Assembly: GCF_001194135.2 (NCBI RefSeq)
Contig: NC_068985.1
Location: 29,741,188-29,783,909, forward strand
Direction of reading: 5' to 3'
Origin: Octopus bimaculoides
Taxonomy: Eukaryota
Length of the DNA: 42,722 nt
Under the pieces are notes generated by a model that saw only the letters and a list, made by a program, of their open reading frames with translations, was not told the DNA's origin and did no database searches. Made by a program: the position numbers and the translations under genes. Shown here piece after piece: positions 17,185 to 42,348 of this stretch. Each line of letters begins with the position of its first letter. Positions within the stretch are counted from its first letter, which is position 1.

Positions 17185-19165
17185 TGCATGTAGGAATTTG
17201 CCTCATGATTATAGGTTCCAGTTGTATTTTCAGGCAAGCAATATGGTTGACCCAAACCAAGCATTCTGATGGAAACTATGAGGAAGCTCATTGAATGGAC
17301 TGCATTGGTAATTGAAAAAGGTAAGCCTTGTTGCACATTGTGTCCGGCTGATTCTACTCAGGGATACACTAAGTGTACAAAGGTCTGTGGAATACTCAGT
17401 CATTTACAGATAATAATTCAATGAGTGGATACATAGATTGAGCAAAGAAATGGAGCTATTCATTGGCAAAATTGACATAGATCCTTTTCATTTTACTTTA
17501 TATACGAGAGACATTTATTGAGTCTCTAATATAACAGTTCTGAATATACATTTCAATGAACCTTTCTTGTCTTTTTCCATGTATGAATTGTATTTTTTCT
17601 GTGCGTGAAAATCTGTTTTCTGTTTTTAATATATTCAAAATTTTTGATCCCTTTCCCTGTTACTCGCATATAGAACAAAAAAAAAAAAACAATCATATTA
17701 AAATGTTTGTTTTGTTTTTTAAAAAAATGATTTAGAAAATTTATTGAATCCTTTTTTAAATATTCAAATTGTTTTTCTCACTTTTTAATTTTTTTTAAAA
17801 TTATGAATATGATTTTTTTCCATAGCAAATTGAAGTCCAAATATGCTTCAGTTACAAAAAAAAAAAAAAGAAAATGTCTGAAATAATTATTTTATTATCA
17901 AGTTTTTCTCTCAGATGTATCATTATTTACAATATTATTAATATTATTTCCAAAATGTAAAATAAAAAAACAAAAAATAAAATGCAAAAAATTTGTATTT
18001 CCCCAAAGACAAGACGATTATTATTATTATAGTGGCAGATTGGTATAATCATTAGACTTTGTGGTATTCTTTCTGGCTCTTTATGTTTTGAGTTCAAGTT
18101 CCAATGAGACCAAAAAAGCCATTGCTGACAGCACATATTCTGCTAAATTCTACCAACTTGCTGTGAAATGCTCTCTTATATATGACAAACACACATATAT
18201 ACATATGTATGTATATATAGATATTTAATAAAGGTCATAATTTTAAGCCTAGTTTAAACAAAATGGAGCACTTATAGATATGGTACCATAGTAGTGAGGG
18301 TCAAATTTTTCAAAATCCATGTTGCCTGGGACTATATATATATAAATTAATATAAGCAGCTACATGCAAGATAAAACCATAAAGGAAACATTTAATTGTC
18401 ACTAATTGTGACTAAGGGTGCCGAATAGCACCTATATTGTTAAAAATAAGAGTTAAAACCCTTAAAACTACGTAAGTGCACATACATACGTATATATACG
18501 CAGACACACACTGACAGGGGAGATAACCGCTCATGACCAAAACTGGAAAATCACCTGGACTAGACAAATTTCGTTTGTTAATCGTAGACTCATCAGCAGT
18601 GTCTATCCTCATTGCTAAGATATTCAGCATATATATATATATATNNNNNNNNNNNNNNNNNNNNNNNNNNNNNNNNNNNNNNNNNNNNNNNNNNNNNNNN
18701 NNNNNNNNNNNNNNNNNNNNNNNNNNNNNNNNNNNNNNNNNNNNNNNNNNNNNNNNNNNNNNNNNNNNNNNNNNNNNNNNNNNNNNNNNNNNNNNNNNNN
18801 NNNNNNNNNNNNNNNNNNNNNNNNNNNNNNNNNNNNNNNNNNNNNNNNNNNNNNNNNNNNNNNNNNNNNNNNNNNNNNNNNNNNNNNNNNNNNNNNNNNN
18901 NNNNNNNNNNNNNNNNNNNNNNNNNNNNNNNNNNNNNNNNNNNNNNNNNNNNNNNNNNNNNNNNNNNNNNNNNNNNNNNNNNNNNNNNNNNNNNNNNNNT
19001 TAATTATTACCTGTCTTTTAAAAGTATTCTCTGGATGCACTGAATACTCCTTTCTTTCATTTGTAACCAAAAATACATACACAGAAACTCGCATTATATA
19101 TATATATATATATATATGTTTTATTTATGGGTTAAGACAACCATTTGTTTTGTGTTATTCTTTTT

Positions 19166-19516
19166 CTTTTACTTGTTTCAACCATACTGGAGTGCCACCT
19201 TAGAGGGTTTTAATTGAAGAAATTGACCCCAGGACTTATTCTATCAGTCTCTCTTGCCGAACTGCTAAGTTACGATGGCACAAACATACCAACATCAGTT
19301 GTCAAGTAATGGTAGGGGGACAAACACAGACATATAAATATGTATATCCATATATGATGGGCTTTTTTCAGTTTCCATCTGCCAAATCCATTCACAAGGC
19401 TTTGGTCAGCCTGAGGCTATAGTAGAAGACACTTGCCCAAGGTGTCACACAGTGGGACTGAATCTGGAACCGTGTGGTTGGAAAGCAAGCTTCTTACCAC
19501 ACAGCCACACCTGCGC
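19166..19516 (-). mobile_element. SINE family A, diverged full-length copy
   Basis: Same tail, body and head as 957-1348. Confidence 0.8.
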
Positions 19517-26129: not shown

Positions 26130-26313
26130 TTATTCGATGACTTCAAGGTATTCTGTAGATCCGGTAAATTCTACAGTAGCATTCAGTGGCTGAGCTTCAT
26201 CCTCTGGTACAGAAGGATCATTGGTGGAGACGCTGCGGAGGGCAGTACAGATCTCAGAGAAGGCTGGGCGGTCATCAGAGTCTTGCTGCCAACATCGTAA
26301 CATCAGTTGGTAA
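26130..26313 (-). CDS. RTK terminal exon M: subdomain XI and C-tail (YQLMLRCWQQDSDDRPAFSEI...LNATVEFTGSTEYLEVIE*)
   Basis: Lies inside ORF 26130-26414; acceptor cttccttctccAG; stop TAA at 26130-26132. Confidence 0.92.
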
Positions 26314-26636
26314 CTGGAGAAGGAAGAAAAAAAGAGAAAGTTTTTAAAAAAATAAATAAGACAAGAAAAAGTAAATAAGAAACAAAAAAAATTTCTGGTT
26401 TCAAATTTTGGCACAAGGCCAGCAATTTTTAGGGGATAGGGGATTAGTTGATTACATGGAGCAACCCAGAGCTCCCAGTGTTCAAATGGTACCTTATTAT
26501 AACAACCCTGAAAGGATGAAAGGCAAAGTCGACATCAGTGACTTTTGAACTCAGAACATAAAGTGTAGGAAGAAATACTATTAAGCATTTTGACTGGTGC
26601 AGTAACAACTCGGCCAGCGTGCCACCTTTGATTTTG

Positions 26637-26674
<38 letters not shown>

Positions 26675-29600
26675 CGTCGTCTCCTTCATTGGACACTAAA
26701 CTCGGCTTGTGAAGACCTATTGGGGCAAGCGAAAGCGAAATCGTGATGGCACCTGTGCCCAGTGTCGTCTTCCTGGGACTTGTACTGGTGGTACGTGTAA
26801 AGACATTCGAGTGAGATTGTTGCCAGTGCCGCTGGACTGGTTCCTGTGCAGGTGGCACGTAAAATACACCATTTTGAGCGTGGCCGTTGCCAGTACCGCC
26901 TGACTGGCCTTTGTGCTGGTGGTATGTAAAAGCACCCACTACACTCTCGGAGTGATTGGCGTTAGGAAGGGCATCCAGCTGTAGAAACTCTGCCAAATCA
27001 GATTGGAGCCTGGGGCAGCCACCTGGTTCACCAGTCCTCAGTCAAATCGTCCAACCCATGCTAGCATGGAAAGCGGACGTTAAACGATGATGATGATGAA
27101 TAATAACCCAAAGTAAGGAAACCTTACTAATGACAGTTAGGAACGAGGGAGTATTGAGAGCAGAGAAGAAAGGGAAAACAAAGGAAGAAGAATTACGCAG
27201 GAAGGGACTACACAATCAATTCTATGTAGCCACAACAGAAGTTGCTGAAAAAAATAGGTGGCATGCATGTGTGTGTGTGTGTGTGTGTGTGCACGTGCAT
27301 AAATGTGTATTTGATCTTTTACTTGTTTCACTCACTGAATTATAGTTGAACAAACAGATCACAGTACTTAAGTCAGATATTTATTTTGTCAGTCTCCTTG
27401 TTGCTGAATTGCTATGTTACTGATTGTCAATTGATGGAGGTGCAACGATGCACATCCACATACACACATAGATAAATATCTGATGGGCTTCCACACAGCT
27501 TCTGCCTACCAAATTCTCTTTCAAGGCATTGGTCAGCCTGGAGCTATAGTAGAAGAGATTTGCCCAAGGAGCCACATAATGACATTGAACCTGGAACCAT
27601 GTGACTATATAAATATTTTCTTTGTCCACTACAGGCATCTTACCTCAACTATAAGGAATTATTATGACAACAATAACGATGGAGTAAAGGGAGTGGTGGT
27701 AGTACAGGTTTGAAGCAAATGTTGGTACTTACATGAATTCTGGGCAATGTTTTGGCTTCTGCATACGTCGTCCACTCTGCAAGTAGCTATGCACATCCCA
27801 AGGTACAACATCTGGGTAAGGGGTAACACCTCGGGTAAGCAGTTCCCACAAAACCACTCCATAAGACCACTGCAATGATGATATGTTGATAGATTAAATC
27901 ACATACACACACACACACACAAAGACACATAAACACAAACACTTATGATAATGTTTCAGTCAATGAAAGACTTCTACACAGCTTCTTCACATATTAGAAA
28001 AAGCCATTGAATTCCTTCAAAATATACCCTACCATCTTTAAAAAAAAGGTAAGAGACATACTGAATAACGCACTCCTAGATACAGAAAAAAGATACATTC
28101 ATACACACACTAGTATAAATGAGCGTATATTTGTGTGTATGTGTGTGCATGTGTGTGTATACCTCACCACTACATATATGCAATGCATGTGTCTGCAGAA
28201 ATATGTACACACACATACACAAGAACGATATCCAGCAGTAGAAACTGAGCCAAAGCTGAGATACTGTAGAAAAATGTAGTCTTTTCACTTGTTGCATCTA
28301 GTTCAAAAGTCATGTCAGCATAAAAAGTGGATGTGAAATGATGACGATGATAATGATGGTGGTGGTGGTGAGATAATCAAGTACATATGTATGCAGGCAT
28401 TTGTAGCTATGTGTGTCTTTATATTGGTTTCAAATTTTGGAACAAGGCCAGCAAGTTCAAGCGGGTGGGGTAAGTCAATTACATCAACCCCAGTGTTCAG
28501 CTGGTACTTCTTTTATTGACTCCGAAAGGATGAAAGGTAAAGTCAACCGCGGTGGAATTTGAACTCAGAACATAAAGATGAATGAAATGCCGCTAAGCAT
28601 TTTACCCAGAGTGCTACCAATTTTGCCAGCTCCCTGCTTAAGAAACACTTAACTTTCACAAGTAGTGTGGCAGTATTATACAATTTATGAGTGCTTTGCT
28701 AACTCACAGTCTTGCGTTCAATTCCACCTATGGGAACTGAACACACAATTATCCATACATACAGAAGAGTACTTGTACTTATAATACTTGTGCTGGTGTT
28801 CAACCAGGATGTGTCAAAACCATCTTCAACCAATAAATCTCCAGTATTGCAAACAGAAGATGCTAACGTTTAGCAATCACACATGCCTAATGTCAATGTT
28901 ATCAACCAGTTTCTGATTCCAACATTGGATACCATGTATGCAAGGATCAGATATCAATTCAAGATCTGATTTAATTGTATTAATCAATGTTTTCGAGTAA
29001 CCCCTTTGCTGTTTCAGGAGAGGGCACTCAGCTTGATGGCATCTCATAGTGATAAAGATATCAAACAAGAAAAAAAGGGAAAAGATGGTGCTTCAGCATG
29101 GCCTTGGCTGTGAAACAAGCTAAAGAATTAAAGAGCTTACCACATCAGTCTGGGTGCTGAAGACAAAGTGTTCCACACTCTCAGGTGCCATCCATTTCAC
29201 TGGTAACTTGGCAGTGTGGTCCTCGGTGAAGTAGAAGTCCTTGCTGAACAGTTCATTGGTCAGGCCAATGTCAGTGAGTTTTACCGTTTTATAATCACAC
29301 AACCTGATGGGTAGACAAGAGAGAGTAAGTGAGTGAGATGATATCAGACTGAGAGAGAGAGAGGGAGACTGATGGGAAGATAGAGTGACACAGAGAAAGG
29401 AAGTTAATCCTGGAAGGATGAAAGGCAAAGTCAGCTTGTGTGAGTCAACTCAGAAGATGGAGAGATAGCTAAATACCATAAGGTATTTTGACCAACACTC
29501 CAATTTTGATTAAGCAATAATGATGGCAATGATGGAGGTGGTGGTGGTGATGATAATGGTAGTGATGGTAATGATGATGATTGTGATGGTGGTGCAGATG

Positions 29601-32600
29601 ATGATGATGATGATTATAATATTGATGATGTTGATGATGATTAAAGTTATACTTACAAACAATTTCTTGCAGCCAAATTGTGATGTATGACCTTCAGTTC
29701 AGATAAGTAGGTCATTCCTTCTGCCACTTGGAGACCATAATCTAATAGAGTGCACACTGACAATGACTGGCAACAAAGAGAGAATTGAATAGGGAGGTTA
29801 AGGTTCAGGCATACACTCACTTGTTTTTAACTAAAAAAAGCTTAATTGTGGAAGGAAATTTTACAACAAAAACAATTTAAAGAAACAAAATTTTATAAAA
29901 GTCACTTACTTTGCTGGAATCCCTAATGTGGGTGCGGAGGTCTACTGTTTCCATATAAGGAACAACAACCACAGGATCATCACTGATGGTCAAGCAGACA
30001 CCAAATATTGGTAGGACATTCTTATGCTGGAGTTCCTTAAACACCAATGAATCCCTCAGAAACTGTTGTAGAGCCTTCTGGTCAGTGTTAGTACCTGTGG
30101 TAGCAGGAATCAGAGAAAGAGTGTTTTAAAGTAATCTAAATTAAAACCATTCACCAAAATTTCATATTAATTCATGTTCCAAACACCAGTTTAATAATCC
30201 TTTCAGCTATAGGCGCAAGTCCTGTAATTTTGGGTGCAGGGGCTCAACAGGTACTTATTTCATCGACCCCCAAATAGATGAAAGGTAAAGTTGACCTTAG
30301 AAACATTTGAACTCAAGACATACACTACTTTATTAGTAAAGTTATTTTAGTAAATTTATCATTATTCTTTTTTTTAATGAATTAAAACAAAGGTGGCGTG
30401 TACTTCAAGAGAAATATGGTAATATAATAACTTAAACCATATCATCATTTAATGTCCGTTTTCCATGCTGGCATGGGTTGGACGGTTTGACTGAGGTATG
30501 GAAAGCCCACGGCTGCACCAGGATCCAATCTGATCTGGTGCAGCCGCGGGCTTTCCAGATCTCAGTCAAATCGTCCAACCCATGCCAGCATGGAAAACGG
30601 ATGTTAAATAATGATGCTGATGATGATAAGAGTTAAGCTGTATTTCATTAGAAAATGGAAAACTGGATCAAAGCCAGACAAGAGAGACAGACTGATGATG
30701 ATACATATTTGAGGTCAACCAATTAGCAAACAAAATAAATTGGCATAGATCAAAGAGAAATTATGGAAAATTCAAAGAGGAGAAAACTCCCAGATGAATT
30801 GATTCTAATGCCATAAATGGATCAATTTTAAAATAACAGAGTTGACACGAAGATTATAGATTAATAAGGTTTAAAGATCATACATGACTCAACTAAAAGA
30901 TCTTGTTTTGCTGTATTTGAAGTTTTTAAAAAATACTTAAGATGGAGAAGAGCAGCATCCCAGACTAACAAAGTGGTCGAGGTTGACTTGACCTTTTGTA
31001 AGTGAATGGTTACAGAGAAAAAAATATAATAAGGAAATTCTAGACCGAAGATGTTCTGGGAATGAATGACTGGGCAAAGTGTTTAGTATGGTGTTTGGAG
31101 AGTCAGTAGCAATAATAAGAAGAAAGTTTGGCATGCTGTGTAGAGTAGGTATGTAGTTTACTACTACAGAAGCATTGTAACTGCAGTATAAGATGGTGGG
31201 AGAAGAAACACCATATCTGTTAGTCTTTTGTCATCTCCCAATTTAATTGGCAATGGGTCTCTTTTTCACAAACCGCCAACAGGTTGTAAGGGATCCACCA
31301 GCATACTTTACATGTGTGCGTGTATGCACACACACACACACACACAAATATACATAAATGTACAATATTGCATGTATAATTTATAAAATTAATTTACCTT
31401 GCAAAGACTTGACAGCAACAGTCATAGGTGGTTCACTGTCACATTTAGTAAACTGGGCCTTGTATGCAACACCAAAGTTACCTGTTGTGAATGAAAGTTA
31501 ATATTGCAATGGACATGTGTCTAACATCGAAATCACAGAAAATATTAATATAAGGGAGTTTTGAATTAAAGAGACAAATTTATGATGGTTTCGTTTTTTA
31601 AGTAATATAGACTGAATGTATATAAATAGGAAAGAAAAGAATAAAAATAAGTTATTTAGTCCCAAGTCAGCACTATGATCAAAGCTAATCTAGATATGAT
31701 TATCTTATTTTCTTTTTGTACAGTGATTTAAGGGAAATTTGGCTGTTGTTTCTGTCATGTTGAACAACCATGTAAAGGTTCTCTTCTGGGCTTGTGTGTT
31801 CATATCCTATCACCACCAGCACTAGCACTCTAAATAATAGTCACTGTTATCTCAGTAGCAGAGTTTGCTCAATAACAGTCAGAAAAACTCTGATAATTAA
31901 CTATTTCAGTAACAATTGCAAGAATTATCCCAGTAACAGATAGTTATCCTAGCGAAAGAATTTCTCTGGTAATACTCAGAACTATAATAATGAGTTACTC
32001 CATTAACAAAGTTATTTCTTTAATAATCTCATTTACCTCAGCATTAACTTGTGATCCCAGTCAGCAGTTAGAGTTATCTCCTAGTGACATTATACAGCAT
32101 ACCATTTAACAAGAATTATAGCAATAAAAAAAGTTATAGGCTGAAAAGGGTTATTGTGGAGGCTTCCCTTCCTTCTCTGACTAAACCACCAGCACCTCTG
32201 ATCCTATGTTTGGTTGATTGGGACTAACATAAGGCTAAACAATGATAATACCTTCTAGATAACCATACAGTAGTCAAACTAATTCTATCATTCACGGGGC
32301 CGACCTGTCCGAGATGCGGGCGGAGCGACGAAACCGTTCTGCACGCACTCGTACAATGTCCCACCATTTCCGAGCTGTCGGCTTACGTCGAACAACTGCT
32401 ATCGCGTGTGGGACGAGTCGGTCTATCAGCCGAGTCTATCGTGAATATTGTCGCGCCTCCTTCTTTTAAATGGGAAGGAAGAGCTATTTTCATCGTACTT
32501 GTGGCTATGGCGAAAGAATGTGTATGGTGGACGCGTCTGAAAGGTCTAGANNNNNNNNNNNNNNNNNNNNNNNNNNNNNNNNNNNNNNNNNNNNNNNNNN

Positions 32601-35600
32601 NNNNNNNNNNNNNNNNNNNNNNNNNNNNNNNNNNNNNNNNNNNNNNNNNNNNNNNNNNNNNNNNNNNNNNNNNNNNNNNNNNNNNNNNNNNNNNNNNNNN
32701 NNNNNNNNNNNNNNNNNNNNNNNNNNNNNNNNNNNNNNNNNNNNNNNNNNNNNNNNNNNNNNNNNNNNNNNNNNNNNNNNNNNNNNNNNNNNNNNNNNNN
32801 NNNNNNNNNNNNNNNNNNNNNNNNNNNNNNNNNNNNNNNNNNNNNNNNNNNNNNNNNNNNNNNNNNNNNNNNNNNNNNNNNNNNNNNNNNNNNNNNNNNN
32901 NNNNNNNNNNNNNNNNNNNNNNNNNNNNNNNNNNNNNNNNNNNNNNNNNNNNNNNNNNNNNNNNNNNNNNNNNNNNNNNNNNNNNNNNNNNNNNNNNNNN
33001 NNNNNNNNNNNNNNNNNNNNNNNNNNNNNNNNNNNNNNNNNNNNNNNNNNNNNNNNNNNNNNNNNNNNNNNNNNNNNNNNNNNNNNNNNNNNNNNNNNNN
33101 NNNNNNNNNNNNNNNNNNNNNNNNNNNNNNNNNNNNNNNNNNNNNNNNNTTTTTTTTTCTCTCGATCCCTTTTGATTGACACCCACCCCTACTTTTTTTC
33201 TTCTCTATTTTTCTTTTTTTTCTTTCCTTTCCCCTCCCAAAAAGAAAAGCTCTACATTGTATTCGTCCCATCTTTGTTGAGCCCTGTGTGGCTAATAACA
33301 GAAATGTAATTCTACCATTCTAATGCTTACCTTTACCAAGGAGTTCTCCAATGTCTAGCTTGTTTCGTGTAATGAGAAGTTCTGTTATTTGTTGTCGTTC
33401 CTGTTCATCATCGAAGCTGGCCAGGAGTTCACTGATGTACTGTGAGGAATCTAATGAAAACAGTTGAAAAAACAGAAGAGGCCATAAAACGAATGAATAG
33501 CAATTTCTAATTTTGGTCCAGGGTCCATACATTTGGGGGCAAATAATGTAGTTGATTAATTAACCCCAGCACTTGACTTAATTTATTCTATTGATCCTAG
33601 GGGAATAAACCACAAGGTTGACCTTGGCAGAATATATCACATACACAGACAGATGACTGTATACATACACATATTAAGACCACACACATATGTTAATGAT
33701 CAGACACATGCAAATGACTTTCACATTAGCATGATTTTGTACAGATCAACCAACTCACACTGGCACACACACACCAGATGCTCTCATCACATATATTACA
33801 TTCCAAGACTCATAGTTGTGAATTAACTGATTGATTGATTGATTGATTGATTGATACATACACACACACACACATGCATATACATACATACAAGCAGAAG
33901 TGTAAATATATACTTGGAAAGACACATGCACAAATATTGACAAGTGGGGAAACATTCTGTTTAAAAGCATCTTTTCAGTGTGTATGAAGTGTAACATTAT
34001 GGATTTCATATTATTGTGTTGCTGTTGATTTGCATGGACATAAAGAGAAGATGGTAGAGAGAGAGGGGGGGAGGGAGAGTGAGAGGGAGAGAGAGAGATT
34101 TTTGAGAGATGGCAAAGAGAGAGAGAGAGATTGTTGAGAGATGGCAAAGAGAGAGAGAGAGACATTTTTGAGAGATGGCAAAGAGAGAGGGAGATTTTTG
34201 AGTGACGGCAAAGAGAGAGAGAGAAATGGAATGTTGCATACATCCGCAAATAAACATAAACTCATAAACCCTGACACATACAATGCCAGACACCTACCCA
34301 TCGTACCAGCTGACATGTGGTTCATCCCAATGGCTTCATTTTCTTTCTTGCCCTCATAGTCCTTGAGTACATCAGGGATATAGTTGTCGCTGGGATCATG
34401 CTTCATATGGCGCCTCACTACACATACTGTCAACAGGATGATGATTGTCAGCATCGGCAGAGCCACACCAAGGATTATGCCAAGGGCTATAGGTCTTTCC
34501 CCTTCCTGCTCCTCGTAGTAGCTCAAGTAACCAATGTCTGACTTGTACTGACCAATATGGAGCTAGAGAAGGAAGAAGAGAAAGAAAGAATTTTTTTTAA
34601 AAATGACAATTCGGTTAACTCACCATTAGGATGTGAGGCAGGGTATTATTTGAGGGCTGGTGGTAAGAAAAATGAATCCTAACAGAGGTAGTTTATGGCA
34701 TTTGTAGGCATGGATGTACCGGTGTCTTGGTTCTGCAGTCCTAAGAAAGAGCTAAACATCACTGTCTTAAAGCCTTTGTTGCCTTATTTCCGATGAAATG
34801 CACTACTTTTGCTTTAATAAATTTTGAAAATGATGAAGGATTTAGAAAAACAACTTTGTCATTATTAAGCTGGTGTTTGGAACATGAATTAACATGTCGG
34901 AGGGAAGGTTTAAATTTACATCGCTTTGAAACGGGAAGTTTGTGTCTTAGAACCTAGGGTGGTCTCAGGCAGGTTGGTATCAAAGGGTTAAGACAGTTGA
35001 GAGAGGAGTTTAGATACAAGTGGAGGTATTTTAATAAAATGAAAATTTCAAGGTGTCTTTTTCTATTTTATATGCATTTTTTTTTTACATATTAGTTTAG
35101 GTGAGATTTTATCTTTGTACAATATTTTTCACAGCTGAAGTTTCCTTCCCAATTGTAAAGCACTCATCAGTCAGGTGAGACTGGGACTTGTCATCTAGGT
35201 AGAATGAAGTAAGCAGGGTGACATGCTTTCTGCAGGAAGGTCGATCTTTGTGATGTGCTTTTTTGGAATAATTGCTGATCTGTAAAGTAAGAATGCAATC
35301 TGTTTTGCCATCTAGCTAGACAGAGGCTTACAGAATAAAGTACCTTATCCAGAGGCAATGGCGACTTAAATGGGTAGAAAGTTTATAAAAGAAGTATTTT
35401 TGAAGAATTGTTAAAAGAAGTTTTCAAAAAAAAAAAAAAAATTGAGGAATAAAGGCTTGGATTTGTAGGTTTAGAAAGTAAAAGATGAGTTGACTTACCA
35501 CTACAGGGGCATTGCCTTCTTTGTCAACACCACTTGGTGAAGAAGGGGGGGTGCACATCAATGCTGTGTCATGTGGTTTCAGATCAGTGCATAGACTGTT

Positions 35601-38600
35601 GCCTACATGTACATACACATCCGTTAACAGCTGGTTGATGCTACGGAATTTACCCTGTGAAAATAACACACAATTTAGATATAGAAAAACGATTTGGAAA
35701 TTAAATCAGTGATTTTGAAGAAAAATAGTGTCCCCTAAACCTTTGAAATAGTTTGATCTAAGAAATAGGAATTTTATTGATCCTTTTCTCAAGGGCACTT
35801 AGTGCATTTTGTCTGACGTGAACAATGAGATACAGAACTAAATAATTGTAAAGTATCTAAATCACTGTGTGTCTATTCTCTTTTACTTGTTTCAGTCATT
35901 TGACTGTGGCCATGCTGGAGCACCGCCTTTAGTCGAGCAAATCGACCTCAGGACTTATTCTTTGGAAGCCTAGTACTTATTCTATTGGTCTCTTTTGCCG
36001 AACCGCTAAGTTATGGGGACATAAACACACCACCATCGGTTGTCAAGCGATGTTGGCAGGGACAAACACAGACACACAAACATACACACACACACACATA
36101 TATATATATACATATATACAACGGGCTTCTTTCAGTTTCCATCCACCAAATCCACTCACAAGGCTTTGGTCGGCCCAAGGCTATAGTAGAAGACACTTGC
36201 CCAAGGTGCCACGCAGTGGGACTGAACCCAGAACCATGTGGTTGGTAAGCAAGCTACTTACCACACAGCCACTCCTACACCTATAAAATGTAAAGACAGA
36301 TGAAATACAGTTAAGCATTTCACCCAGCATGCTAACGTTTCTGCCAGAGGAATCCCTATTTTACTATACTTTTTCCCACTAAGAACCCCACTAGATTTTG
36401 CTTCTTACAGTTCACATTTTCCCTTCATTTCTACTTCATAAAACAAAACAGAAAAAAGGATAAAAGAGAATATAAAAGATAGATTTCATCAGCAACCGAG
36501 AGGCTGCTCATTCACCAGCACAGGATGGTAACTAGTTGAACTGATCCCTCATTTTATGTCCATGAAGATGTATAAAGGCAAGTACTAAAAATCTGTAGAT
36601 ATATTTCTGTAGTACAGTAAAGCACATAAGTGTGTGTGTGTGTGCATGTGTGTATTATCTACATTCATTTCTTTCTTTCTAGTCAGCTATAGAATACAAT
36701 GGCTGAAGAGATGCTTAACTTCATGTAAGACAAATGCTATCAGTGAGAATGCTGCTCCTGGCACCATCACATGTACAAAAAGCAAACGAAGTGCAGATCA
36801 CTCATCAAAATAAAAAAAAAAAACATATGAGAAGAGGAACAGCAAGGGCCTTTGAAACAAGTATGAAGCAGAACTGCTGCAAATCTTTGCTTTCAATTTA
36901 ATAGGCTAACATTTCTTGTTAAATTTTGCTTAATATTCTGTTTTTCAATTAATTCTGAAAATAATCAAGAATTTGGAGATATTTAGTAGAATAATTTTAC
37001 TTCTCATTATTAAGCTGGTGTTTGAAGTTTCTCATGTAAAATTATGATGGACGGTTTTAATTTAAACATAATTTTTTATGCAAAGTTTTCTATCACAGAA
37101 CCAGAGGCATTCTGAAGGAAGTTATTATCAAAAGGATTAACTAACAATAAGGCTGCCCTCTTAAACAGTCCTTTTGAATGTTGAGACACTATTTGTGACC
37201 TACTGAGAATGATCTACATACATTAACTCATAACATGGATTTAACTGGAAATCTTTCTCACTGAGAAGCAATATCATCAAAGCTTTAATATTTTTTTTCA
37301 TTATGAAGTATACACTTAGTTATTACACACTTAGATTCAATGAGAAGTATATAAAGGTGGAAGCAGACTAAGATATTTCATAATCACTGGTACAATTTAA
37401 GTTATTTAGAAACCATTGTGATGTGGAGTACTTGGTGCTAGTAAGATATGAAGAAAAATATTGAAAATAGAAGAATAAGAGAAAAATTGATTGAGAAGGA
37501 AAATGAGACAAAAAGAAAACAAAATGGAAGGAAATTAAGATAAAAAAAGAATAACGAGAAAAAAAGAAGAGGAAGAGAGAAGAGAGGATGGAAGAATGAA
37601 GCTAACAGAAAGACATAGACAAGAGGATAAAGAAGAAAGAGGAAGACAACCAAGACAAAAAGTACAGAATTGGAAGACGAGTCAGAAGAAGACAAAAGGC
37701 AACAAAGTAAAATAAAACAAAAACAAAATGAAAGAAAAATGGAGACTTCTCACCTCAATCACTAATTTGTCACCTTTCATATATTTTTTGGTACTCCTTT
37801 CACCGGTGAAAGGCTCAGCAACAGGGTCAGGGAAGTAAAGAAGAGGGCGGAACTCTGGATTATCTGAGAGATTTTTCAGTTGAACGACACCATCCATGAT
37901 GAAACCGTACTGCACCTCTTTGGGGCTTGTCAAAGACACCTGGTTTTCTCCAAAGTCCAATGATGGCATTCGGCATTCCAGCATGTTCTGGTGCTTTGAC
38001 TTGCAGGGCTGTTTTAATGATGTTTGGAATTTTTGAAAAAAAAAAAAAGTGAAAATAATTCTAGACTCAATGTACATTCCACTTAACTCTTCCATACCAT
38101 TAAATAAATCCCCTAAAAAATGATTTACTTAAACGTGGTTGTTCTTTTACGACAAATTATACTGCGGTAGATACCACGAGAGAAACTCTCATATTGACTT
38201 TTGATGCAAAATGCATACTTGTTTATATCACTAGCAGGGAGATAAATCCCTACCACCTCCAATGCCAAGATCACCAGACCATGTGATTTCAACTTTCCTT
38301 GGTCTCACCAATGATAGATGCTCGACTGCCAGAGATAACAGCAACTAATTTCCTTGCTAACAATATACAGAAAAACTGGCAGAACAAGCGCTGATGTTGC
38401 AATCAGCCAATGAGATTGTTAAAAAAATATATATTAACAACAGAGGCAGTATTAATACTGAGCGGTAATATTTATCCCCACTTAAATGTGGCTGTTCTAT
38501 TAGAACAAATTATACAGCAGTACATATTTTTCTCACATACGTAGTCAATATTTAAAAGTTGAGGTGGGCTGCACCTGCGTACCTCAGTTGCTATGGCATT

Positions 38601-41600
38601 GAGTTAGATCCAGCCACCCCCATTAACGAGGACAAAACCCGGATTTAAAACACATGTGGCATCTAAGAACAACAACTATGCCTGAGATCATTGGAGCTTT
38701 GGAGATAATTCCACATGGCACTCTTAAATACTACAATAAAGAGTTTAGGAAAATCACACAAGGTGACAAATGCTGGACATTATTTCTTTTTACAATTTAA
38801 TAAACTAAATCATAAAAATAATAAATAACTAATTATAAGAGGTTATATTCTATCAGTTGATAACATTTTATATACAATGTGAAAATCAGATATACCACTG
38901 ACCGCTCTTGTGTGATCCAAAATAAAGCTGTAGAGCTTTATTGCATTGAAGGAGATTTACAAAAGACATGCATTTCCTAATATCAGATTTAAGTGAAAAT
39001 GTTGACTTAGCGATGGACAGTGACCAAGAGGAAAATAAGACTAGTCAGTGAAAAGCTCACAATCTATTATGTTATGAACTACCATTTATGGAAAATGGAA
39101 GAGAATGTCAAAGAAGAGGTGTGCACATGCATGTGTTGTGTGTGTGTGTGTGTGTGTGTAACAGCAGTTCATTTGATATGAAGGTCATCACACACAGGCA
39201 TGTACCAGTGACTGGATATTTTCTTCAGCCACAAAGGATTACTATCACATACAACTGTCACTAAACAGATTAGTAGAATATTATAATAGATGAGGTGAAA
39301 CTAAACTATAAAGAAATCTCTAAAAGACAACTCACTGATTCCTTCATGGTGCTGTTGTATTTGATAAACAGTTTTGGTTCTTGAATAAGATTCAAATTGG
39401 TTCCTGTTACAGTCAATGTTGTCCCTCCACTAATGAAGAAAGAGATAGAAGAAACAACAATAAAAATAAAAATAATGATAATAATGATCTTCCACTGTAT
39501 CTACTAGAGCAGAGGTTCTCAAACTTTTTGGGTCACAGCCCCCCCCCCCATGGCCACGTGATACCCACAGCACCCCCACCCCTATTTTTATGCATAAATA
39601 TTTTATATTTTACTAATTTATATATACTATGAATCATTTGACATTTAATATAATATTATGTAATTTGTATACAATACTATAATAATATAATAAATTCACA
39701 GCATCCCACAATTCACTTCCTTCCTCCCAAGGTCTCCTTTTTCCCTCCCACTAAGGCACCAGCGCCCACCTGGACTGTCTCAATGCCCAATGGAAGGCAG
39801 TAGCACCCACTTTGAGAACCTATGTACTAGAGGCACAAGGCATTGGCAGAATTTGAGATCATGATGTAATGAATCAGATGGAATATTACTAAGCATTTTG
39901 TCTGGCATGCAAAATATTCTGCCAGCTTGACACCCTAATAATAATGATAATTCTTACTATAGGTGCAAACATGGCTGTGTGGTAAAGAAGCTTGCCTCCT
40001 CACCACATGGTTCCAGGTTCAGTCCCACTGTATGCTACCTTGGGCAAGTGTCTTCTACTATAGCCTTGTGAGTAGATTTGGTAGACGGAAACTTAAAGAA
40101 GCCTGTCGAATATGTATATATCTATGTGTGTGTGTGTGTGTGTCTTTGTGTCTGTGTTTGTCCCCTGCCACTGTTTGACAACTGGTGCTGGCATGTTTAC
40201 ATCCCCATAACTTAGCAGTTCGTCAAAAGAGACTGATAGAATAAGCACCAGGCTGGAAGAAAAGAGGTACTGTGGTTGGGTCATTCGATTTAAAATTCTT
40301 CAAGGTGGTGCCCCAGCATGGCTAAAGTCTAATGGTTGAAACATGTACAAGATAAAAGATAAAAGACACTATAGACAAAAAAAGGGGTACCTAATTTCTG
40401 GGTGGTTGGATTTGTAAGACAGGGGTGGGATGTAAGACATTTAGTCACAGGCTGCAAGAGATATAAAACTTTGTGTCTGTGTCAAGATATTTAACTCTCA
40501 AGTGAGCACAATCCACCTAGCAATATCTAGGTACCACATGTTAGGAAACAAAAGCATTGACAATGTACCGAAATTGACAAATAGTATGTTAGCTTGCAGA
40601 AGGCTGAATTGTTAGGAAACAAGACCTGAAATTTTGATCACATCAATGCCAATACTCAACTGGTGTGTATTTCATTAACCTCAAAAGAATGAAAGATAAA
40701 GTCGACTGTAGTGGAATTTGAACTCAGAACATAAAGCCATAAGAAATATTGCTTAGCACAGAAAAGAAGAACCTTCTGTGTGATGAGTTTGTACGGAGTG
40801 GCTGTGTGGTAAGTAGCTTGCTTACCAACCACATGGTTCCGGGTTCAGTCCCACTGTGTGGCACCTTGGGCAAGTGTCTTCTAATATAGCCTTGGGCTGA
40901 CCAAAGCCCTGTGAGTGGATTTGGTAGGCGGAAACTGAAAGAAGCCCGTCGTATATATATGTATATATATATATGTATGTGTGTGTATATGTTTGCGTGT
41001 CTGCGTTTGTCCCCCCCAACATCGCTTGACAACCGATGCTGGTGTGTTTATGTCCCCATAACTTAGCAGTTCGGCAAAAGAGACCGATAGAATAAGTACT
41101 AGGCTTCCAAAGAATAAGTCCTGGGGTCGATTTGCTCGACTAAAGGTGGTGCTCCAGCATGACCACAATCAAATGACTGAAACTAGTAAAAGAGTAAAAA
41201 TAGAGAGAAAATGAAAAACAAGGCAGGTGTCATACCTGAGAATACTTCTATTAGGTTCCACCATTGTAATGGTTGGATCTTCAACAAATTCAAACTTCTC
41301 ATCAAGGTGCTTCAGTAATCCTCCGAAACTTACTGACACATCAGCTGCTGTAATGGAACCCTCTGCTGAAGTAACACACTCAATAACTGAGGTGTTTTGA
41401 CTGTGAAGATAAAAAGATATTTAAAAAAATCAACAAAAAATAAAATAAGAATTGAAGACAGTGAATAAATAATGGTTTAAAATTTTGGTATAAGGCCCAA
41501 CAGCTTGGGGAAGGGGCTAAAGTTGATTAAATCGATTCCAGTGCTCAACTGGTACTTATTTTATTGACCCTGAAAGGATGAAAGGTAAATTTGACCTTGG

Positions 41601-42348
41601 TAGAATTTGAACTCAGAACATAAAGATAAACGAAATGTTGCTAAACATTTTGCCCAGCATGGGACATGGAATTGCAAGAATACTTTTTTTCCAACTACTG
41701 TGGGGTATACATTTTTCTGGAAAGTTATAGTGAGGCCTAGGGAAAAAATAAATTGGGGAAACACCGATCTAATCCTTCCTCCTGTGCACTGATACCTGGA
41801 AGTGTTCTCACTTCACTCCAGCCAATGCTTTATCTAAAGGCATTGACCTACAGATGTTCAAAATGTACCTCAACAGCAGGAAAGTCACTAGGAGAAGAAA
41901 AGTACTGCTCAGTCTCTTCTGACTAAAAAAATTACAAACTAATAATAATAATAATAATAATGATACTTTTTACTATAGGCACAAGGCCTAAAATTTTGGG
42001 AGTGTGGACTAGTTGATAAGTACATGCTCAGCATGTACTTATTTTATTGACTCCGTGAAAGGACAAAAGACAAAGAGGGCCAAGTGGAATTTGAACTCAA
42101 AATATAAAGTTGGAAGAAATGCTGCTAAGCATTTTGTTCAGTGTGCTAATGGCTCTGCCACCGCACAAACTAAAACAACAATAATAATAATAAAACTATT
42201 AAATATCTTACCTTACAACTTCACAGGGGTTGCTACCGACAATGATGTCCCATCTACTACCTGCATTCATATGGTCACCATGGATCATCACATGGGTTCC
42301 ACCAGATTTTGGACCCTTTTTCGGAGTGATCTCCTTCAAAGATGGGGT
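26130..42348 (-). CDS. MET-like: MET/RON (HGF-receptor) family receptor tyrosine kinase, predicted pseudokinase; 3' portion, 13 exons, 684 aa in window (3 IPT domains, TM, kinase-like domain); 5' exons outside window
   Basis: Manual splicing gives one open frame with canonical GT-AG sites and matching phases, 2055 nt in total. IPT motifs (PSLKEITPKKGPKSGGTHV; DPTITMVEPNRSILSGGTTLTVTGTNL), a TM helix, and MET-family kinase signatures (AKLPVKWMAPES, WELLTRGVTPYPDV). Confidence 0.93.
26393..26628 (-). mobile_element. SINE family C in the last RTK intron
   Basis: Full family C consensus motifs. Confidence 0.8.
26675..27099 (+). mobile_element. Family D LINE 3' end with internal sub-repeats and (GAT)n tail
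   Basis: Longest copy; repeats GTTGCCAGT...GACTGG...GGTGG units; tail identical to the 2272 copy. Confidence 0.75.
27316..27603 (-). mobile_element. SINE family A, old diverged copy
   Basis: CTTTTACTTGTTTCA tail and GCTATAGTAGAAGA...TGCCCAAGG body. Confidence 0.6.
27733..27869 (-). CDS. RTK exon L: subdomains IX-X (WSYGVVLWELLTRGVTPYPDVVPWDVHSYLQSGRRMQKPKHCPEF)
   Basis: Acceptor tcattgcAG, donor GTAAGT; 137 nt, phase 0 to 2; the MET-family ELxTRGxxPYPDV motif is present. Confidence 0.94.
28424..28640 (-). mobile_element. SINE family C
   Basis: Family C consensus motifs. Confidence 0.8.
29141..29303 (-). CDS. RTK exon K: DFG-equivalent and activation loop (TVKLTDIGLTNELFSKDFYFTEDHTAKLPVKWMAPES...TQTDV)
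   Basis: Lies inside ORF 29120-29428; acceptor tacccatcAG, donor GTAAGC; 163 nt, phase 2 to 0. Confidence 0.94.
29515..29641. repeat. (GAT/GGT)n low-complexity tract in the intron after the catalytic-loop exon
   Basis: Seen directly. Confidence 0.8.
29657..29766 (-). CDS. RTK exon J: catalytic loop (SLSVCTLLDYGLQVAEGMTYLSELKVIHHNLAARNC)
   Basis: Acceptor tttgttgccAG, donor GTAAGT; 110 nt, phase 0 to 2; HHNLAARN replaces HRDLAARN. Confidence 0.94.
29910..30094 (-). CDS. RTK exon I: alphaC to hinge (QQFLRDSLVFKELQHKNVLPIFGVC...PYMETVDLRTHIRDSSK)
   Basis: Acceptor ctaccacAG, donor GTAAGT; 185 nt, phase 1 to 0. Confidence 0.92.
30196..30312 (-). mobile_element. SINE family C fragment
   Basis: GGTACTTATTTCATCGACCCC...GATGAAAGGTAAAGTTGACC...ATTTGAACTCA. 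Confidence 0.65.
30441..30615. repeat. Inverted dimer of family D tails forming an 81-bp hairpin (7 mismatches, 13-nt loop) in the RTK intron between the VAVK and alphaC exons
   Basis: Arm 30441-30521 against the reverse complement of 30535-30615: 74 of 81 identical by manual alignment. Confidence 0.9.
31398..31481 (-). CDS. RTK exon H: glycine loop and VAVK lysine (GNFGVAYKAQFTKCDSEPPMTVAVKSLQ)
   Basis: Acceptor tcacaacAG, donor GTAAAT; 84 nt, phase 1 to 1; GxGxxG and VAVK are intact. Confidence 0.93.
33331..33450 (-). CDS. RTK exon G: juxtamembrane region to kinase subdomain I (DSSQYISELL...LDIGELLGKG)
   Basis: Acceptor ttttcattAG, donor GTAAGC; 120 nt, phase 1 to 1. Confidence 0.9.
33498..33630 (-). 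mobile_element. SINE family C, diverged fragment
   Basis: TTTCTAATTTTGGT...TTGATCCTAGGGGAATAAAxCACAAGGTTGACCTTGGCAGAAT. Confidence 0.55.
34085..34223. repeat. GA-rich minisatellite, about 4 units of about 32 bp (GAGAGAGATTTTTGAGAGATGGCAAA)
   Basis: Direct tandem repeats seen; TC-rich on the RTK sense strand just downstream of the TM-exon donor. Confidence 0.85.
34298..34562 (-). CDS. RTK exon F: end of IPT, transmembrane helix (IALGIILGVALPMLTIIILLTVCVV), basic stop-transfer RRH and start of juxtamembrane region
   Basis: Acceptor cttccttctctAG, donor GTAGGT (an alternative in-frame GTACGA lies 9 nt upstream); 265 nt, phase 0 to 1. Confidence 0.9.
34767..34991. mobile_element. piggyBac-like MITE (TTAA-flanked)
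   Basis: Ends TTAAAGCCTTTGTTGCC and GGTATCAAAGGGTTAA; the internal TCATTATTAAGCTGGTGTTTG recurs near 37005 and, inverted, near 30180. Confidence 0.6.
35499..35654 (-). CDS. RTK exon E: last IPT (GKFRSINQLLTDVYVHVGNSLC...LMCTPP...APVV)
   Basis: Lies inside ORF 35424-35669; acceptor ttttcacAG, donor GTAAGT; 156 nt, phase 0 to 0. Confidence 0.9.
35876..36278 (-). mobile_element. SINE family A, young full-length copy
   Basis: Near-identical to 957-1348; inverted relative to 40795-41194. Confidence 0.88.
36895..37140. mobile_element. Second, more diverged copy of the TTAA MITE
   Basis: Shares CATTATTAAGCTGGTGTTTG and a right end ATCAAAAGGATTAA with 34767-34991. Confidence 0.4.
37754..38008 (-). 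CDS. RTK exon D: IPT (PCKSKHQNMLECRMPSLDF...YFPDPVAEPF...KLVIE)
   Basis: Lies inside ORF 37682-38095; acceptor aaaacAG, donor GTGAGA; 255 nt, phase 0 to 0. Confidence 0.88.
39336..39429 (-). CDS. RTK exon C: IPT (SGGTTLTVTGTNLNLIQEPKLFIKYNSTMKES)
   Basis: Acceptor ttcttcattAG, donor GTGAGT; 94 nt, phase 2 to 0; GGTxLTVTGTNL IPT motif. Confidence 0.92.
39510..39824. mobile_element. hAT (Buster/Charlie-type) MITE, 315 bp
   Basis: TIRs CAGAGGTTCTCAAA and TTTGAGAACCTATG (13 of 14 match); perfect 8-bp TSD TACTAGAG (39502-39509 and 39825-39832) with central TA. Confidence 0.88.
39961..40358 (+). mobile_element. SINE family A, moderately diverged
   Basis: TGGCTGTGTGGTAAAGAAGCTTGC head, CCTTGGGCAAGTGTCTTCTACTATAGCC core, family A tail. 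Confidence 0.8.
40640..40762 (-). mobile_element. SINE family C fragment
   Basis: CTCAACTGGT...AAAAGAATGAAAGATAAAGTCGAC...GGAATTTGAACTCAGAAC. Confidence 0.65.
40795..41194 (+). mobile_element. SINE family A, young full-length copy
   Basis: Complete head, microsatellite and tail; highly similar to the reverse complement of 35876-36278. Confidence 0.88.
41236..41400 (-). CDS. RTK exon B: IPT end and next IPT start (SQNTSVIECVTSAEG...FEFVEDPTITMVEPNRSIL)
   Basis: Acceptor atcttcacAG, donor GTATGA; 165 nt, phase 2 to 2; open in frame. Confidence 0.9.
41473..41660 (-). mobile_element. SINE family C
   Basis: Family C consensus motifs. Confidence 0.75.
41968..42165 (-). mobile_element. SINE family C
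   Basis: CTACTATAGGCACAAGGCC-type end and GGAATTTGAACTC B-box. Confidence 0.7.
42212..42348 (-). CDS. RTK exon A: start of IPT domain (TPSLKEITPKKGPKSGGTHVMIHGDHMNAGSRWDIIVGSNPCEVV)
   Basis: Acceptor tttctttcacAG, donor GTAAGA; 137 nt, phase 0 to 2; typical IPT/TIG start motif. Confidence 0.9.

What the first reader, a model, noticed from the sequence alone, without database searches (positions are those of the whole stretch)
26130..33450. Intact MET/RON-family receptor whose kinase domain is a predicted pseudokinase (HRD is HHN, DFG is DIG, alphaC Glu is Asp)
Seen in sequence: the catalytic loop reads VIHHNLAARN (codons 29685-29677 CAT CAC AAT), so the catalytic-base Asp is Asn and the RD arginine is His. 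The Mg-binding motif is DIG (29272-29264), and the alphaC position (MET QFLTEG) is QFLRDS (Asp at 30053-30051). GxGxxG and VAVK are retained. All 13 exons keep canonical splice sites, phase and an open frame over 684 codons, which argues for a maintained gene rather than a pseudogene. Established knowledge: Asp-to-Asn in the catalytic loop marks the pseudokinase ErbB3 (HRN), while vertebrate MET and RON are active kinases. Inference: a catalytically impaired MET-like receptor could act as an allosteric partner, co-receptor (as PTK7/Off-track does with plexins) or ligand sink. I know of no described MET-family pseudokinase but cannot search to confirm this.
Basis: partly seen in the sequence, partly recalled or inferred. 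Interest (0 to 1): 0.85.

Follow-up and report, generated by a model that had tools for sequence, protein, structure and literature searches.

The report
Conserved mollusc MET-like receptor pseudokinase
The window holds the last 13 exons of a cephalopod receptor with a MET-type kinase domain that has lost its catalytic aspartate; cephalopods, snails and bivalves all share this loss under strong selection, so it is an old, working "dead-kinase" receptor rather than an error or a decaying gene.

Summary
On the minus strand, 13 exons with AG/GT borders give 684 open codons: three IPT/TIG domains, a transmembrane helix and a tyrosine-kinase fold closest to human MET. The fold reads HHN for HRD, DIG for DFG and Asp for the alphaC Glu, but keeps GKGNFG, VAVK and the catalytic-loop Asn. 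The N gap lies inside intron 7. The split Gly-loop codon joins cleanly across it, so no exon is hidden.

This is not an assembly error. The Argonauta hians orthologue is 90% identical, has the same 13 exons and has identical HHN codons. Kinase-domain dN/dS is about 0.06.

Asp-to-Asn is found across the clade: 13 of 13 mollusc sequences that cover the site, in a group with 95% bootstrap support. Twelve canonical MET-family kinases keep every catalytic residue.

Full-length orthologues (1429-1655 aa) have a plexin-type ectodomain, the "Met-LP" architecture described in 2019. The gene is therefore Met-LP rather than canonical MET/RON, and only its C-terminal 43% lies in the window.

Its motif pattern matches HER3. 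I infer a non-catalytic, HER3-like signalling partner that is phosphorylated in trans. No paper in the searchable library describes a MET-family pseudokinase. Biochemical inactivity is untested.

The parts
42212..42348 (-). Exon 1 in the window (aa 1-46 of the partial model). It starts an IPT/TIG domain. Earlier exons (Sema, PSI, first IPTs) lie beyond the window end.
   Evidence: AG/GT borders. Pfam TIG. Matches Argonauta residue 913 onward.
41236..41400 (-). Exon 2, IPT/TIG
39336..39429 (-). Exon 3, IPT/TIG
37754..38008 (-). Exon 4, IPT/TIG
35499..35654 (-). Exon 5, last IPT/TIG
34298..34562 (-). Exon 6: stalk, transmembrane helix (34493-34416, containing the GxxxG motif LGIILG at 34484-34467) and the conserved juxtamembrane motif NYIPDVLKDYEG (34385-34350). 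The donor at 34298 is supported by Argonauta; an alternative in-phase donor lies at 34307.
   Evidence: This stretch is 100% identical to Argonauta and conserved across mollusc classes.
33331..33450 (-). Exon 7: juxtamembrane segment and the first half of the Gly-rich loop (..LGKG)
32551..33149 (.). Assembly gap (599 N), wholly inside intron 7. It does not affect the coding sequence.
31398..31481 (-). Exon 8: second half of the Gly loop (NFG) and the beta3 VAVK (31419-31408)
29910..30094 (-). Exon 9: alphaC helix QFLRDS (30065-30048; Asp replaces Glu at 30053-30051) and the PYM hinge (29960-29952)
29657..29766 (-). Exon 10: catalytic loop VIHHNLAARN. HHN lies at 29685-29677; the catalytic Asp is Asn and the RD Arg is His.
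29141..29303 (-). Exon 11: DIG at 29272-29264 (for DFG), activation loop SKDFYF (29245-29228; MET YY is FY here) and APE
27733..27869 (-). Exon 12: C-lobe (WSYGVVLWELLTRGVTPYPD...)
26130..26313 (-). Exon 13: end of the C-lobe, then the conserved C-terminal tail QPLNATVEF..GSTEYLEVIE with Tyr679 (26150-26148), then the TAA stop

Best explanation
The window carries the 3' 13 exons (684 codons) of the cephalopod orthologue of the mollusc 'Met-LP' receptor. This is a single-pass receptor with a plexin-type ectodomain. Only the last three IPT domains are in the window; Sema, three PSI repeats and further IPTs are seen in the orthologues. Its intracellular MET-type kinase fold lost the catalytic-base Asp (HxN) before cephalopods, gastropods and bivalves diverged. 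In most lineages it also lost the alphaC Glu, the DFG Phe and the RD Arg.

Shown:
- the motif changes and their conservation across the clade;
- monophyly of the clade;
- strong purifying selection;
- retention of the Gly loop, beta3 Lys, catalytic-loop Asn, DxG Asp, hinge and APE.

Inferred:
- The domain no longer works as an efficient phosphotransferase.
- It still folds, and probably still binds nucleotide. Its motif pattern matches HER3 row for row.
- It signals without catalysis. A ligand binds the plexin-like ectodomain; the published proposal is a semaphorin.
- The receptor pairs with itself or with an active kinase through the conserved GxxxG transmembrane helix, the juxtamembrane segment and the pseudokinase domain.
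- Conserved tyrosines are phosphorylated in trans and recruit SH2 effectors. The candidates are the juxtamembrane NYIPDVLKDYEG and the C-terminal acidic GSTEYLEV, a Y-hydrophobic-x-Val site like MET's docking sites.
For: - Motifs and coordinates.
- The kinase fold is closest to human MET (1.6e-75), then RON, then MER. Pfam finds three TIG domains plus PK_Tyr.
- Argonauta hians orthologue P0023 (GAB1598516.1, 1597 aa): 90% identity, HHN/DIG/Asp identical, same 13-exon structure and identical CAT CAC AAT codons.
- Nei-Gojobori (NG86) dN/dS: 0.048 overall, 0.056 kinase, 0.030 TM+JM.
- Site table. In the clade, D1204 is Asn in 13/13, E1127 is replaced in 13/14, F1223 in 13/14 and M1211 in 14/14. 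K1110 is kept in 13/14, N1209 in 14/14 and D1222 in 11/14. Twelve canonical MET-family kinases, from human to horseshoe crab, are invariant at every one of these sites.
- Taxa: Argonauta, Solemya, Lottia, Candidula, Bulinus, Plakobranchus, Elysia, Ostrea, Pinctada, Sinanodonta, Mactra, Mya.
- The clade is monophyletic with 95% NJ bootstrap support.
- Plexin-type ectodomain in Argonauta, Ostrea and P0027.
- Full-length intron-free transcript contigs show that the gene is expressed: P0018 from a Hua snail transcriptome and P0027.
- Conserved TM, juxtamembrane and C-tail motifs.
- HER3 motif table: GXGXXG, VCIK, alphaC His, HRN....N, DFG, accessible ATP site, allosteric activator (PMC13259870).
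Against: - No biochemical data exist. Sequence alone has misjudged kinases before; from general knowledge, WNK and CASK are active and HER3 keeps weak activity.
- In the cephalopod form the DxG Asp, the Gly of DIG, the Lys, the Gly loop and the PYM hinge are all intact, so some residual activity is possible.
- No partner kinase was identified. I could not find a canonical MET in any cephalopod with the searches available.
- The ligand is unknown.
- The activation-loop and C-tail tyrosines are not invariant. P0027 lacks the activation-loop Tyr at the Y1235 position; Mactra and Mya lack the tail Tyr; Sinanodonta has Phe there.
- Deep nodes of the NJ tree are unsupported. The relation to the active-looking Lingula 1605-aa receptor is therefore unresolved.
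Confidence: 0.62

Rival explanations
1. It is an atypical but genuinely active kinase. The Asn-containing catalytic loop still supports biologically meaningful phosphotransfer, so the receptor signals by its own catalysis, perhaps weakly as reported for HER3.
For: - The beta3 Lys, Gly loop, catalytic-loop Asn, DxG Asp, hinge and APE are retained.
- The kinase domain is under strong constraint.
- One activation-loop Tyr is kept in most members.
- From general knowledge, HER3 with HRN keeps very low activity.
Against: - The catalytic base is Asn in every clade member.
- The alphaC Glu, the RD Arg, regulatory-spine residues (M1131, F1223) and the DFG Gly also drift. This is the pattern expected once catalysis is no longer selected.
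- The kinase domain evolves faster than its canonical paralogue. Gastropod-bivalve identity is 41-58% in the clade against 69-73% in canonical MET.
Confidence: 0.2
2. It is an artefact or a dying gene: an assembly or sequencing error at the motif codons, a hidden exon in the N gap, or a recently inactivated pseudogene.
For: The window has ten N gaps, and one of them lies inside the gene.
Against: - The HHN, DIG and Asp codons are the same in an independent genome, Argonauta.
- All 13 exons are open with AG/GT borders.
- The gap is intronic and the Gly loop joins exactly across it.
- dN/dS is about 0.05.
- The substitution is shared by three mollusc classes.
Confidence: 0.02
3. It is a pure decoy or ligand sink. 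Only the ectodomain matters, and the intracellular part is a passive remnant.
For: Catalysis is lost. Decoy receptors are a known outcome of such loss.
Against: - The intracellular part is as constrained as the ectodomain. Omega is 0.030 for TM+JM and 0.056 for the kinase, against 0.041 for the ectodomain.
- The TM and juxtamembrane stretch is 100% identical between the two cephalopods.
- Juxtamembrane and tail motifs are conserved across classes.
Confidence: 0.05
4. Coleoid A-to-I RNA editing conditionally restores the canonical motif. CAC to CGC gives His to Arg, and AAT to GAT gives Asn to Asp. Some transcripts would then encode HRD and an active kinase.
For: Read directly from the sequence, both changes are single A-to-G substitutions. 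Extensive recoding by editing in coleoids is established knowledge.
Against: - Synonymous conservation around the motif between the window and Argonauta is not elevated: 0.61-0.71 against 0.62 overall.
- The Asn state is ancestral, and it is conserved in molluscs that are not known for heavy recoding.
- The alphaC Asp and the DIG Ile cannot be repaired by A-to-I changes.
Confidence: 0.03

Closest known systems
Met-LP receptors (Met-like with plexin ectodomain; Junqueira Alves et al. 2019, PMC6374515)
   Same: - Orthologues of the window gene have Sema, three PSI repeats, plexin-type TIG domains, a TM helix and a tyrosine-kinase domain.
- They occur in molluscs alongside a separate canonical MET. 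[quoted passage not shown]
   Different: - The paper describes the architecture and a Sema-domain phylogeny. The text I read says nothing about catalytic motifs.
- Here the mollusc clade is shown to lack the catalytic Asp throughout.
- A Lingula receptor with the same architecture keeps HRD/DFG, so not all Met-LP-type receptors are degraded.
HER3/ErbB3 receptor pseudokinase
   Same: - The motif pattern is the same: Gly loop and beta3 Lys kept, alphaC Glu replaced, catalytic Asp to Asn with the downstream Asn kept, DxG Asp kept (PMC13259870 Table 2).
- The HRNLAARN catalytic loop found in many clade members (Lottia, Candidula, P0027; Bulinus as FHRNLAARN) follows HER3's HRNxxxxN pattern. That it is letter for letter identical to HER3's loop is from my own memory.
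- Both have an active paralogue in the same genomes.
   Different: - The RTK subfamily is unrelated (EGFR family against MET/plexin), and so is the ectodomain.
- The similarity is convergent.
- ATP binding, allosteric activation and trans-phosphorylation are proven for HER3 and untested here.
- The cephalopod form also lost the RD Arg (HHN) and has DIG.
Canonical MET/RON receptor tyrosine kinases
   Same: - MET is the best match to the kinase fold among solved structures (43% identity, E=1.6e-75).
- Both have IPT domains before the TM helix, a GxxxG at the start of the TM helix (the MET side is from general knowledge) and a C-terminal Y-hydrophobic-x-Val site.
   Different: - Canonical members keep HRD, DFG, the alphaC Glu and the twin YY without exception, and they have a single PSI repeat.
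- The window gene has HHN, DIG, Asp and FY, and its orthologues have a plexin-type ectodomain.
PTK7/Off-track (receptor pseudokinase that partners plexins)
   Same: It is a catalytically impaired RTK tied to semaphorin/plexin biology. It gives a precedent for a pseudokinase acting as a co-receptor.
   Different: - PTK7 has an Ig-domain ectodomain, keeps the catalytic Asp (HKD), lacks the DFG Asp (ALG) and has an occluded ATP site.
- It is not homologous beyond the kinase fold.
Plexins
   Same: The ectodomain architecture of the orthologues is plexin-like. Database names such as 'plexin-A4-like' reflect this.
   Different: Plexins have a cytoplasmic GAP domain. This protein has a tyrosine-kinase fold instead.

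Membership tests
Protein pseudokinase (sequence definition: lacks at least one of the beta3 Lys, the HRD Asp or the DFG Asp) | Loss of the catalytic-loop Asp | tested here: met
   HHN at 29685-29677 aligns to MET H1202-R1203-D1204.
Protein pseudokinase (sequence definition: lacks at least one of the beta3 Lys, the HRD Asp or the DFG Asp) | Absent or negligible phosphotransfer activity | not testable with these tools
   This needs recombinant protein assays.
Canonical MET/RON RTK | Kinase domain of the MET subfamily | tested here: met
   The best PDB hits are MET, then RON. It sits among MET-family kinases in the NJ tree, but deep nodes are unsupported.
Canonical MET/RON RTK | Ectodomain of Sema, one PSI repeat and four IPT domains | tested here: not met
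   The N-terminus is outside the window. The 90%-identical Argonauta orthologue has three PSI repeats plus TIG_plexin and TIG_2, whereas Haliotis canonical MET has one PSI.
Canonical MET/RON RTK | Intact HRD, DFG, alphaC Glu and twin activation-loop tyrosines | tested here: not met
   The window gene has HHN, DIG, Asp and FY, while 12 canonical members are invariant at these sites.
Canonical MET/RON RTK | Bidentate C-terminal docking site (YVHV...YVNV) | tested here: inconclusive
   There is a single conserved Tyr in GSTEYLEV (Y-L-E-V). Its function is unknown.
Met-LP (PMC6374515) | Complete plexin-type ectodomain joined to a tyrosine-kinase domain | tested here: inconclusive
   In the window, only three IPT domains, the TM helix and the kinase could be tested, and these are present. 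The complete architecture is shown in the orthologues P0023, P0031 and P0027, not in this window.
Met-LP (PMC6374515) | Coexists with a separate canonical MET in lophotrochozoans | tested here: inconclusive
   Canonical MET with HRD/DFG was found in Haliotis, Batillaria, Mizuhopecten, Dreissena, Pecten and Owenia. None was found for a cephalopod, but the searches were insensitive.
HER3-type (nucleotide-binding, allosteric) receptor pseudokinase | HxN catalytic loop with the Lys, Gly loop, catalytic-loop Asn and DxG Asp retained and the alphaC Glu replaced | tested here: met
   compared with PMC13259870 Table 2.
HER3-type (nucleotide-binding, allosteric) receptor pseudokinase | Binds ATP, allosterically activates an active paralogue and is phosphorylated in trans | not testable with these tools
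   This needs thermal-shift, co-expression and phosphorylation assays.
Plexin | Cytoplasmic Ras/Rap GAP domain | tested here: not met
   The cytoplasmic part is PK_Tyr_Ser-Thr (7.4e-81), with no plexin cytoplasmic domain.

The most novel reading that the evidence does not exclude
In coleoid cephalopods the genomic HHN (CAT CAC AAT) is recoded by A-to-I RNA editing to HRD (CAC to CGC, AAT to GAT) in some tissues or conditions. An ancient pseudokinase receptor would then become a kinase that is switched on after transcription.
Probability: 0.03. Interest if true: 0.9.

Novelty: new member of a known kind. Interest (0 to 1): 0.55.

Why it matters
Receptor tyrosine pseudokinases are a small, much-studied group. 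A 2026 review lists eight in humans, and none is in the MET family.

This finding adds a MET/plexin-superfamily example with these properties:
- It is ancient, being shared by cephalopods, gastropods and bivalves.
- It is strongly constrained.
- It has converged on HER3's motif pattern.

It also gives the little-known Met-LP receptors a concrete, testable signalling model: a plexin-like, possibly semaphorin-binding ectodomain coupled to a non-catalytic kinase scaffold.

It provides a natural comparison of an active paralogue with a degraded one in the same genomes. That is useful for asking which MET kinase features serve catalysis and which serve scaffolding.

Database names for these proteins vary ('plexin-A4-like', 'hepatocyte growth factor receptor', 'Plexin b2a'), and none flags the loss of the catalytic residue.

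Tried and rejected
- **Word-index protein searches were insensitive.** The spliced protein, its non-kinase half and a canonical-MET alignment missed even the 90%-identical Argonauta protein. They found no cephalopod canonical MET. That question stays open and is not answered negatively.
I used the Bulinus homologue P0002 instead.
- **First tree attempts failed.** A Biopython distance/bootstrap tree timed out and one script call was lost. I replaced them with my own NJ run of 200 bootstraps.
- **Exon-6 donor.** I first used the donor at 34307 (681 codons). The Argonauta sequence favours 34298 (684 codons).
- **Missing microexon.** I looked for the 'VKADMNG' juxtamembrane segment that other molluscs have. 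It is absent from the minus-strand frames of the window, the strand that carries the gene, and absent from the Argonauta protein.
- **RNA-editing idea.** I tested it through local synonymous conservation and found no signal.
- **Source of the basal clade member P0027 (SRR6926326).** Only a neighbouring accession could be traced, to a chiton run. The organism is not established.
- **No structure prediction was run.** The spliced window protein cannot be submitted, and a shallow alignment would not settle whether the ATP site is accessible.
- **Rejected readings:** assembly error, pseudogene and canonical MET/RON. The reasons are given under the rival explanations and the membership tests.
Full report
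**1. What is in the sequence**

The gene lies on the minus strand. I rebuilt it from open-frame segments and splice sites. It has 13 exons:

| Exon | Coordinates |
|---|---|
| 1 | 42348-42212 |
| 2 | 41400-41236 |
| 3 | 39429-39336 |
| 4 | 38008-37754 |
| 5 | 35654-35499 |
| 6 | 34562-34298 |
| 7 | 33450-33331 |
| 8 | 31481-31398 |
| 9 | 30094-29910 |
| 10 | 29766-29657 |
| 11 | 29303-29141 |
| 12 | 27869-27733 |
| 13 | 26313-26130 (TAA stop) |

Every exon has an AG acceptor, every exon except the last has a GT donor, and the phases are consistent. Exon 6 has two in-phase donors 9 nt apart. The Argonauta orthologue reads MSAGTMD, which favours the donor at 34298.

Pfam finds three IPT/TIG domains and a tyrosine-kinase domain (PK_Tyr_Ser-Thr, 7.4e-81). 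A transmembrane helix lies between them.

- HHN at 29685-29677
- DIG at 29272-29264
- the Asp of QFLRDS at 30053-30051
- GKGNFG and VAVK retained

**2. The assembly gap**

The N run at 32551-33149 falls inside intron 7. The Gly-rich loop is split G-K-G|N-F-G by a phase-1 codon (g|gt), and the two halves join exactly. The junction aligns without a gap to human MET. It also matches the Argonauta protein and gene, where the same two exons are adjacent. Nothing coding is hidden in the gap.

**3. Which kinase it resembles**

Among solved structures the best match is human MET (E=1.6e-75; 43% identity in my alignment), followed by RON and then MER/AXL. The alignment places HHN opposite MET H1202-R1203-D1204, DIG opposite D1222-F1223-G1224, and the Asp opposite the alphaC E1127. 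The activation loop reads FY where MET has Y1234-Y1235.

**4. It is not an error and not a pseudogene**

An exhaustive HMMER search with the Bulinus homologue recovered a 1597-aa Argonauta hians protein, GAB1598516.1, annotated 'plexin-A4-like'.
- It is 90% identical to the window model and has the same HHN, DIG and Asp.
- Its genomic locus has the same 13 exons.
- Its HHN codons are identical, CAT CAC AAT.

Nei-Gojobori estimates between the two species:

| Region | dN/dS |
|---|---|
| All 664 aligned codons (pN 0.048, pS 0.56) | 0.048 |
| Kinase domain | 0.056 |
| TM + juxtamembrane | 0.030 |
| Ectodomain part | 0.041 |
| C-terminal tail | 0.127 |

dS is near 1, so the ratios are approximate. 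The contrast between pN and pS is nevertheless unambiguous.

**5. The loss is shared across the clade**

Fifteen sequences form a group with 95% bootstrap support in an NJ tree of kinase domains. Its internal branching roughly follows cephalopods, gastropods and bivalves. The members are:
- the window sequence and Argonauta
- Solemya, Lottia, Candidula, Bulinus, Plakobranchus and Elysia
- Ostrea, Pinctada, Sinanodonta, Mactra and Mya
- two transcript contigs (P0018, P0027)

The site-by-site table shows:

| MET position | Role | Pseudokinase clade |
|---|---|---|
| D1204 | catalytic base | Asn in 13/13 that cover it |
| E1127 | alphaC Glu | replaced in 13/14 |
| F1223 | DFG Phe | replaced in 13/14 |
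| M1131 | regulatory spine | replaced in 13/14 |
| M1211 | catalytic spine | replaced in 14/14 |
| R1203 | RD Arg | varies (R, H or G) |
| K1110 | beta3 Lys | kept in 13/14 |
| N1209 | catalytic-loop Asn | kept in 14/14 |
| D1222 | DxG Asp | kept in 11/14 |

The Gly loop, H1202, P1158, D1164 and the APE Glu are also largely kept. Twelve canonical MET-family kinases, from human to horseshoe crab and including several molluscs, are invariant at every one of these sites.

The basal member P0027 has HRN and DYG but keeps the alphaC Glu. This suggests that the Asp-to-Asn and Phe-to-Tyr changes came first.

The pseudokinase domain also evolves faster than its canonical paralogue. Gastropod-bivalve identity is 41-58% in the clade, against 69-73% for canonical MET.

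**6. What family it belongs to**

Full-length clade members are 1429-1655 aa. Pfam shows this order of domains in Argonauta, Ostrea and P0027: Sema, PSI, TIG_plexin, PSI, TIG_2, PSI, three TIG, TM, kinase. Haliotis canonical MET has a single PSI repeat.

This is the 'Met-LP' architecture defined by Junqueira Alves et al. 2019 (PMC6374515). [quoted passage not shown] That paper does not discuss catalytic residues, and neither does a 2022 review that cites it.

The word 'intact' cannot be shown, because only the C-terminal 43% is in the window.

A Lingula receptor of the same architecture (1605 aa) keeps VAVK, Glu, HRD and DFG. The degradation is therefore not a property of all such receptors. 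Its orthology to the mollusc clade is unresolved, because deep nodes are unsupported.

**7. Other conserved features**

- *TM and juxtamembrane.* This stretch is 100% identical between the window and Argonauta. It is unusually conserved across classes: KPIALGIILGV..P...LL..C..RRH.KH...NYIPDVLKDYEGKK, with a GxxxG motif at the start of the helix.
- *C-terminus.* It carries a conserved QPL..VE..GSTEYLEV motif with one Tyr in an acidic, Y-hydrophobic-x-Val context. The Tyr is lost in Mactra and Mya and is Phe in Sinanodonta.
- *Expression.* P0018 (from a Hua snail transcriptome, PMC12222893) and P0027 are intron-free full-length contigs of about 5 kb. The gene is therefore transcribed and spliced in those animals.

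**8. How it most likely works**

The motif pattern matches HER3 row for row in the table of the 2026 review (PMC13259870): Gly loop intact, Lys intact, alphaC Glu replaced, HxN....N, DxG Asp present. HER3 has an accessible ATP site and acts as an allosteric activator of active family members.

By analogy, I infer that this receptor signals without efficient catalysis:
- The plexin-like ectodomain binds a ligand.
- The receptor associates with itself or with an active kinase through the conserved TM and juxtamembrane segments and the pseudokinase domain.
- The conserved juxtamembrane and tail tyrosines are phosphorylated in trans and recruit effectors.

The strong constraint on all cytoplasmic parts argues against a mere decoy. 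Residual intrinsic activity cannot be excluded. None of this is tested biochemically, and no partner was identified.

**9. Novelty**

Searches of the paper library for MET-family or plexin-ectodomain pseudokinases found nothing. This covers the Met-LP papers, an oyster kinome paper and recent pseudokinase reviews. The proteins exist in databases under assorted names. The gene family and the pseudokinase concept are both known. What appears new is the recognition that the mollusc Met-LP clade is an ancient, constrained, HER3-like pseudokinase.

**10. A speculative point specific to cephalopods**

Both CAC to CGC (His to Arg) and AAT to GAT (Asn to Asp) are single A-to-G changes. A-to-I editing could in principle write HRD. 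I found no local excess of synonymous conservation that would hint at an editing structure, and the Asn state is ancestral. I rate this at about 3%, but RNA-seq would check it cheaply.

Noticed in passing
window 15913-17266 (+): Degenerate Tc1/mariner-type transposase. Pfam gives HTH_Tnp_Tc3_2 at 1.5e-10, plus a Sleeping-Beauty-type HTH. The reading frame is broken into at least three pieces.
   Followed up: partly
window 7677-8722 (-): Two adjoining ORFs of a retroelement Gag-like protein with a CCHC zinc knuckle (PF00098, 2e-4).
   Followed up: partly
window 941-1350, 15183-15439, 19228-19515, 27457-27603, 35878-36275, 39972-40352, 40795-41197: An interspersed repeat of about 400 bp, present in at least seven copies at 73-90% identity on both strands. 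Four copies lie in introns 2, 4 and 12 of the receptor gene.
   Followed up: partly
window 34298-34562 (exon 6) and orthologues: The transmembrane helix and juxtamembrane segment are 100% identical to Argonauta and highly conserved across mollusc classes, including a GxxxG motif (LGIILG) and NYIPDVLKDYEGKK. This is far more conservation than the canonical MET paralogues show in the same region.
   Followed up: partly
window 29500-29650 (intron 10) and 34010-34290 (intron 6): Long low-complexity tracts lie right after the exons. One is CAT/CAC-rich (reads as poly-His or poly-Ile) and one is CT-rich (reads as SLSL). Neither is coding.
   Followed up: no
homologue sets, not in the window: Canonical-looking MET receptors with HRD/DFG occur in chelicerates (Tachypleus, Argiope, Leptotrombidium, Ornithodoros). 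The 2019 survey reported no Mets in Ecdysozoa.
   Followed up: no
L002 (SRR6926326 transcript contig, P0027): This is the basal member of the pseudokinase clade. It has HRN and DYG but keeps the alphaC Glu. Its run accession is five away from a Tonicella lineata (chiton) run cited in PMC7003433. The source organism itself is not established.
   Followed up: partly
window 1935-22903: Nine further assembly gaps (10-839 N) lie in the 3'-flanking 26 kb. No other convincing protein-coding gene was seen there, and ARAGORN found no tRNA genes in the window.
   Followed up: partly
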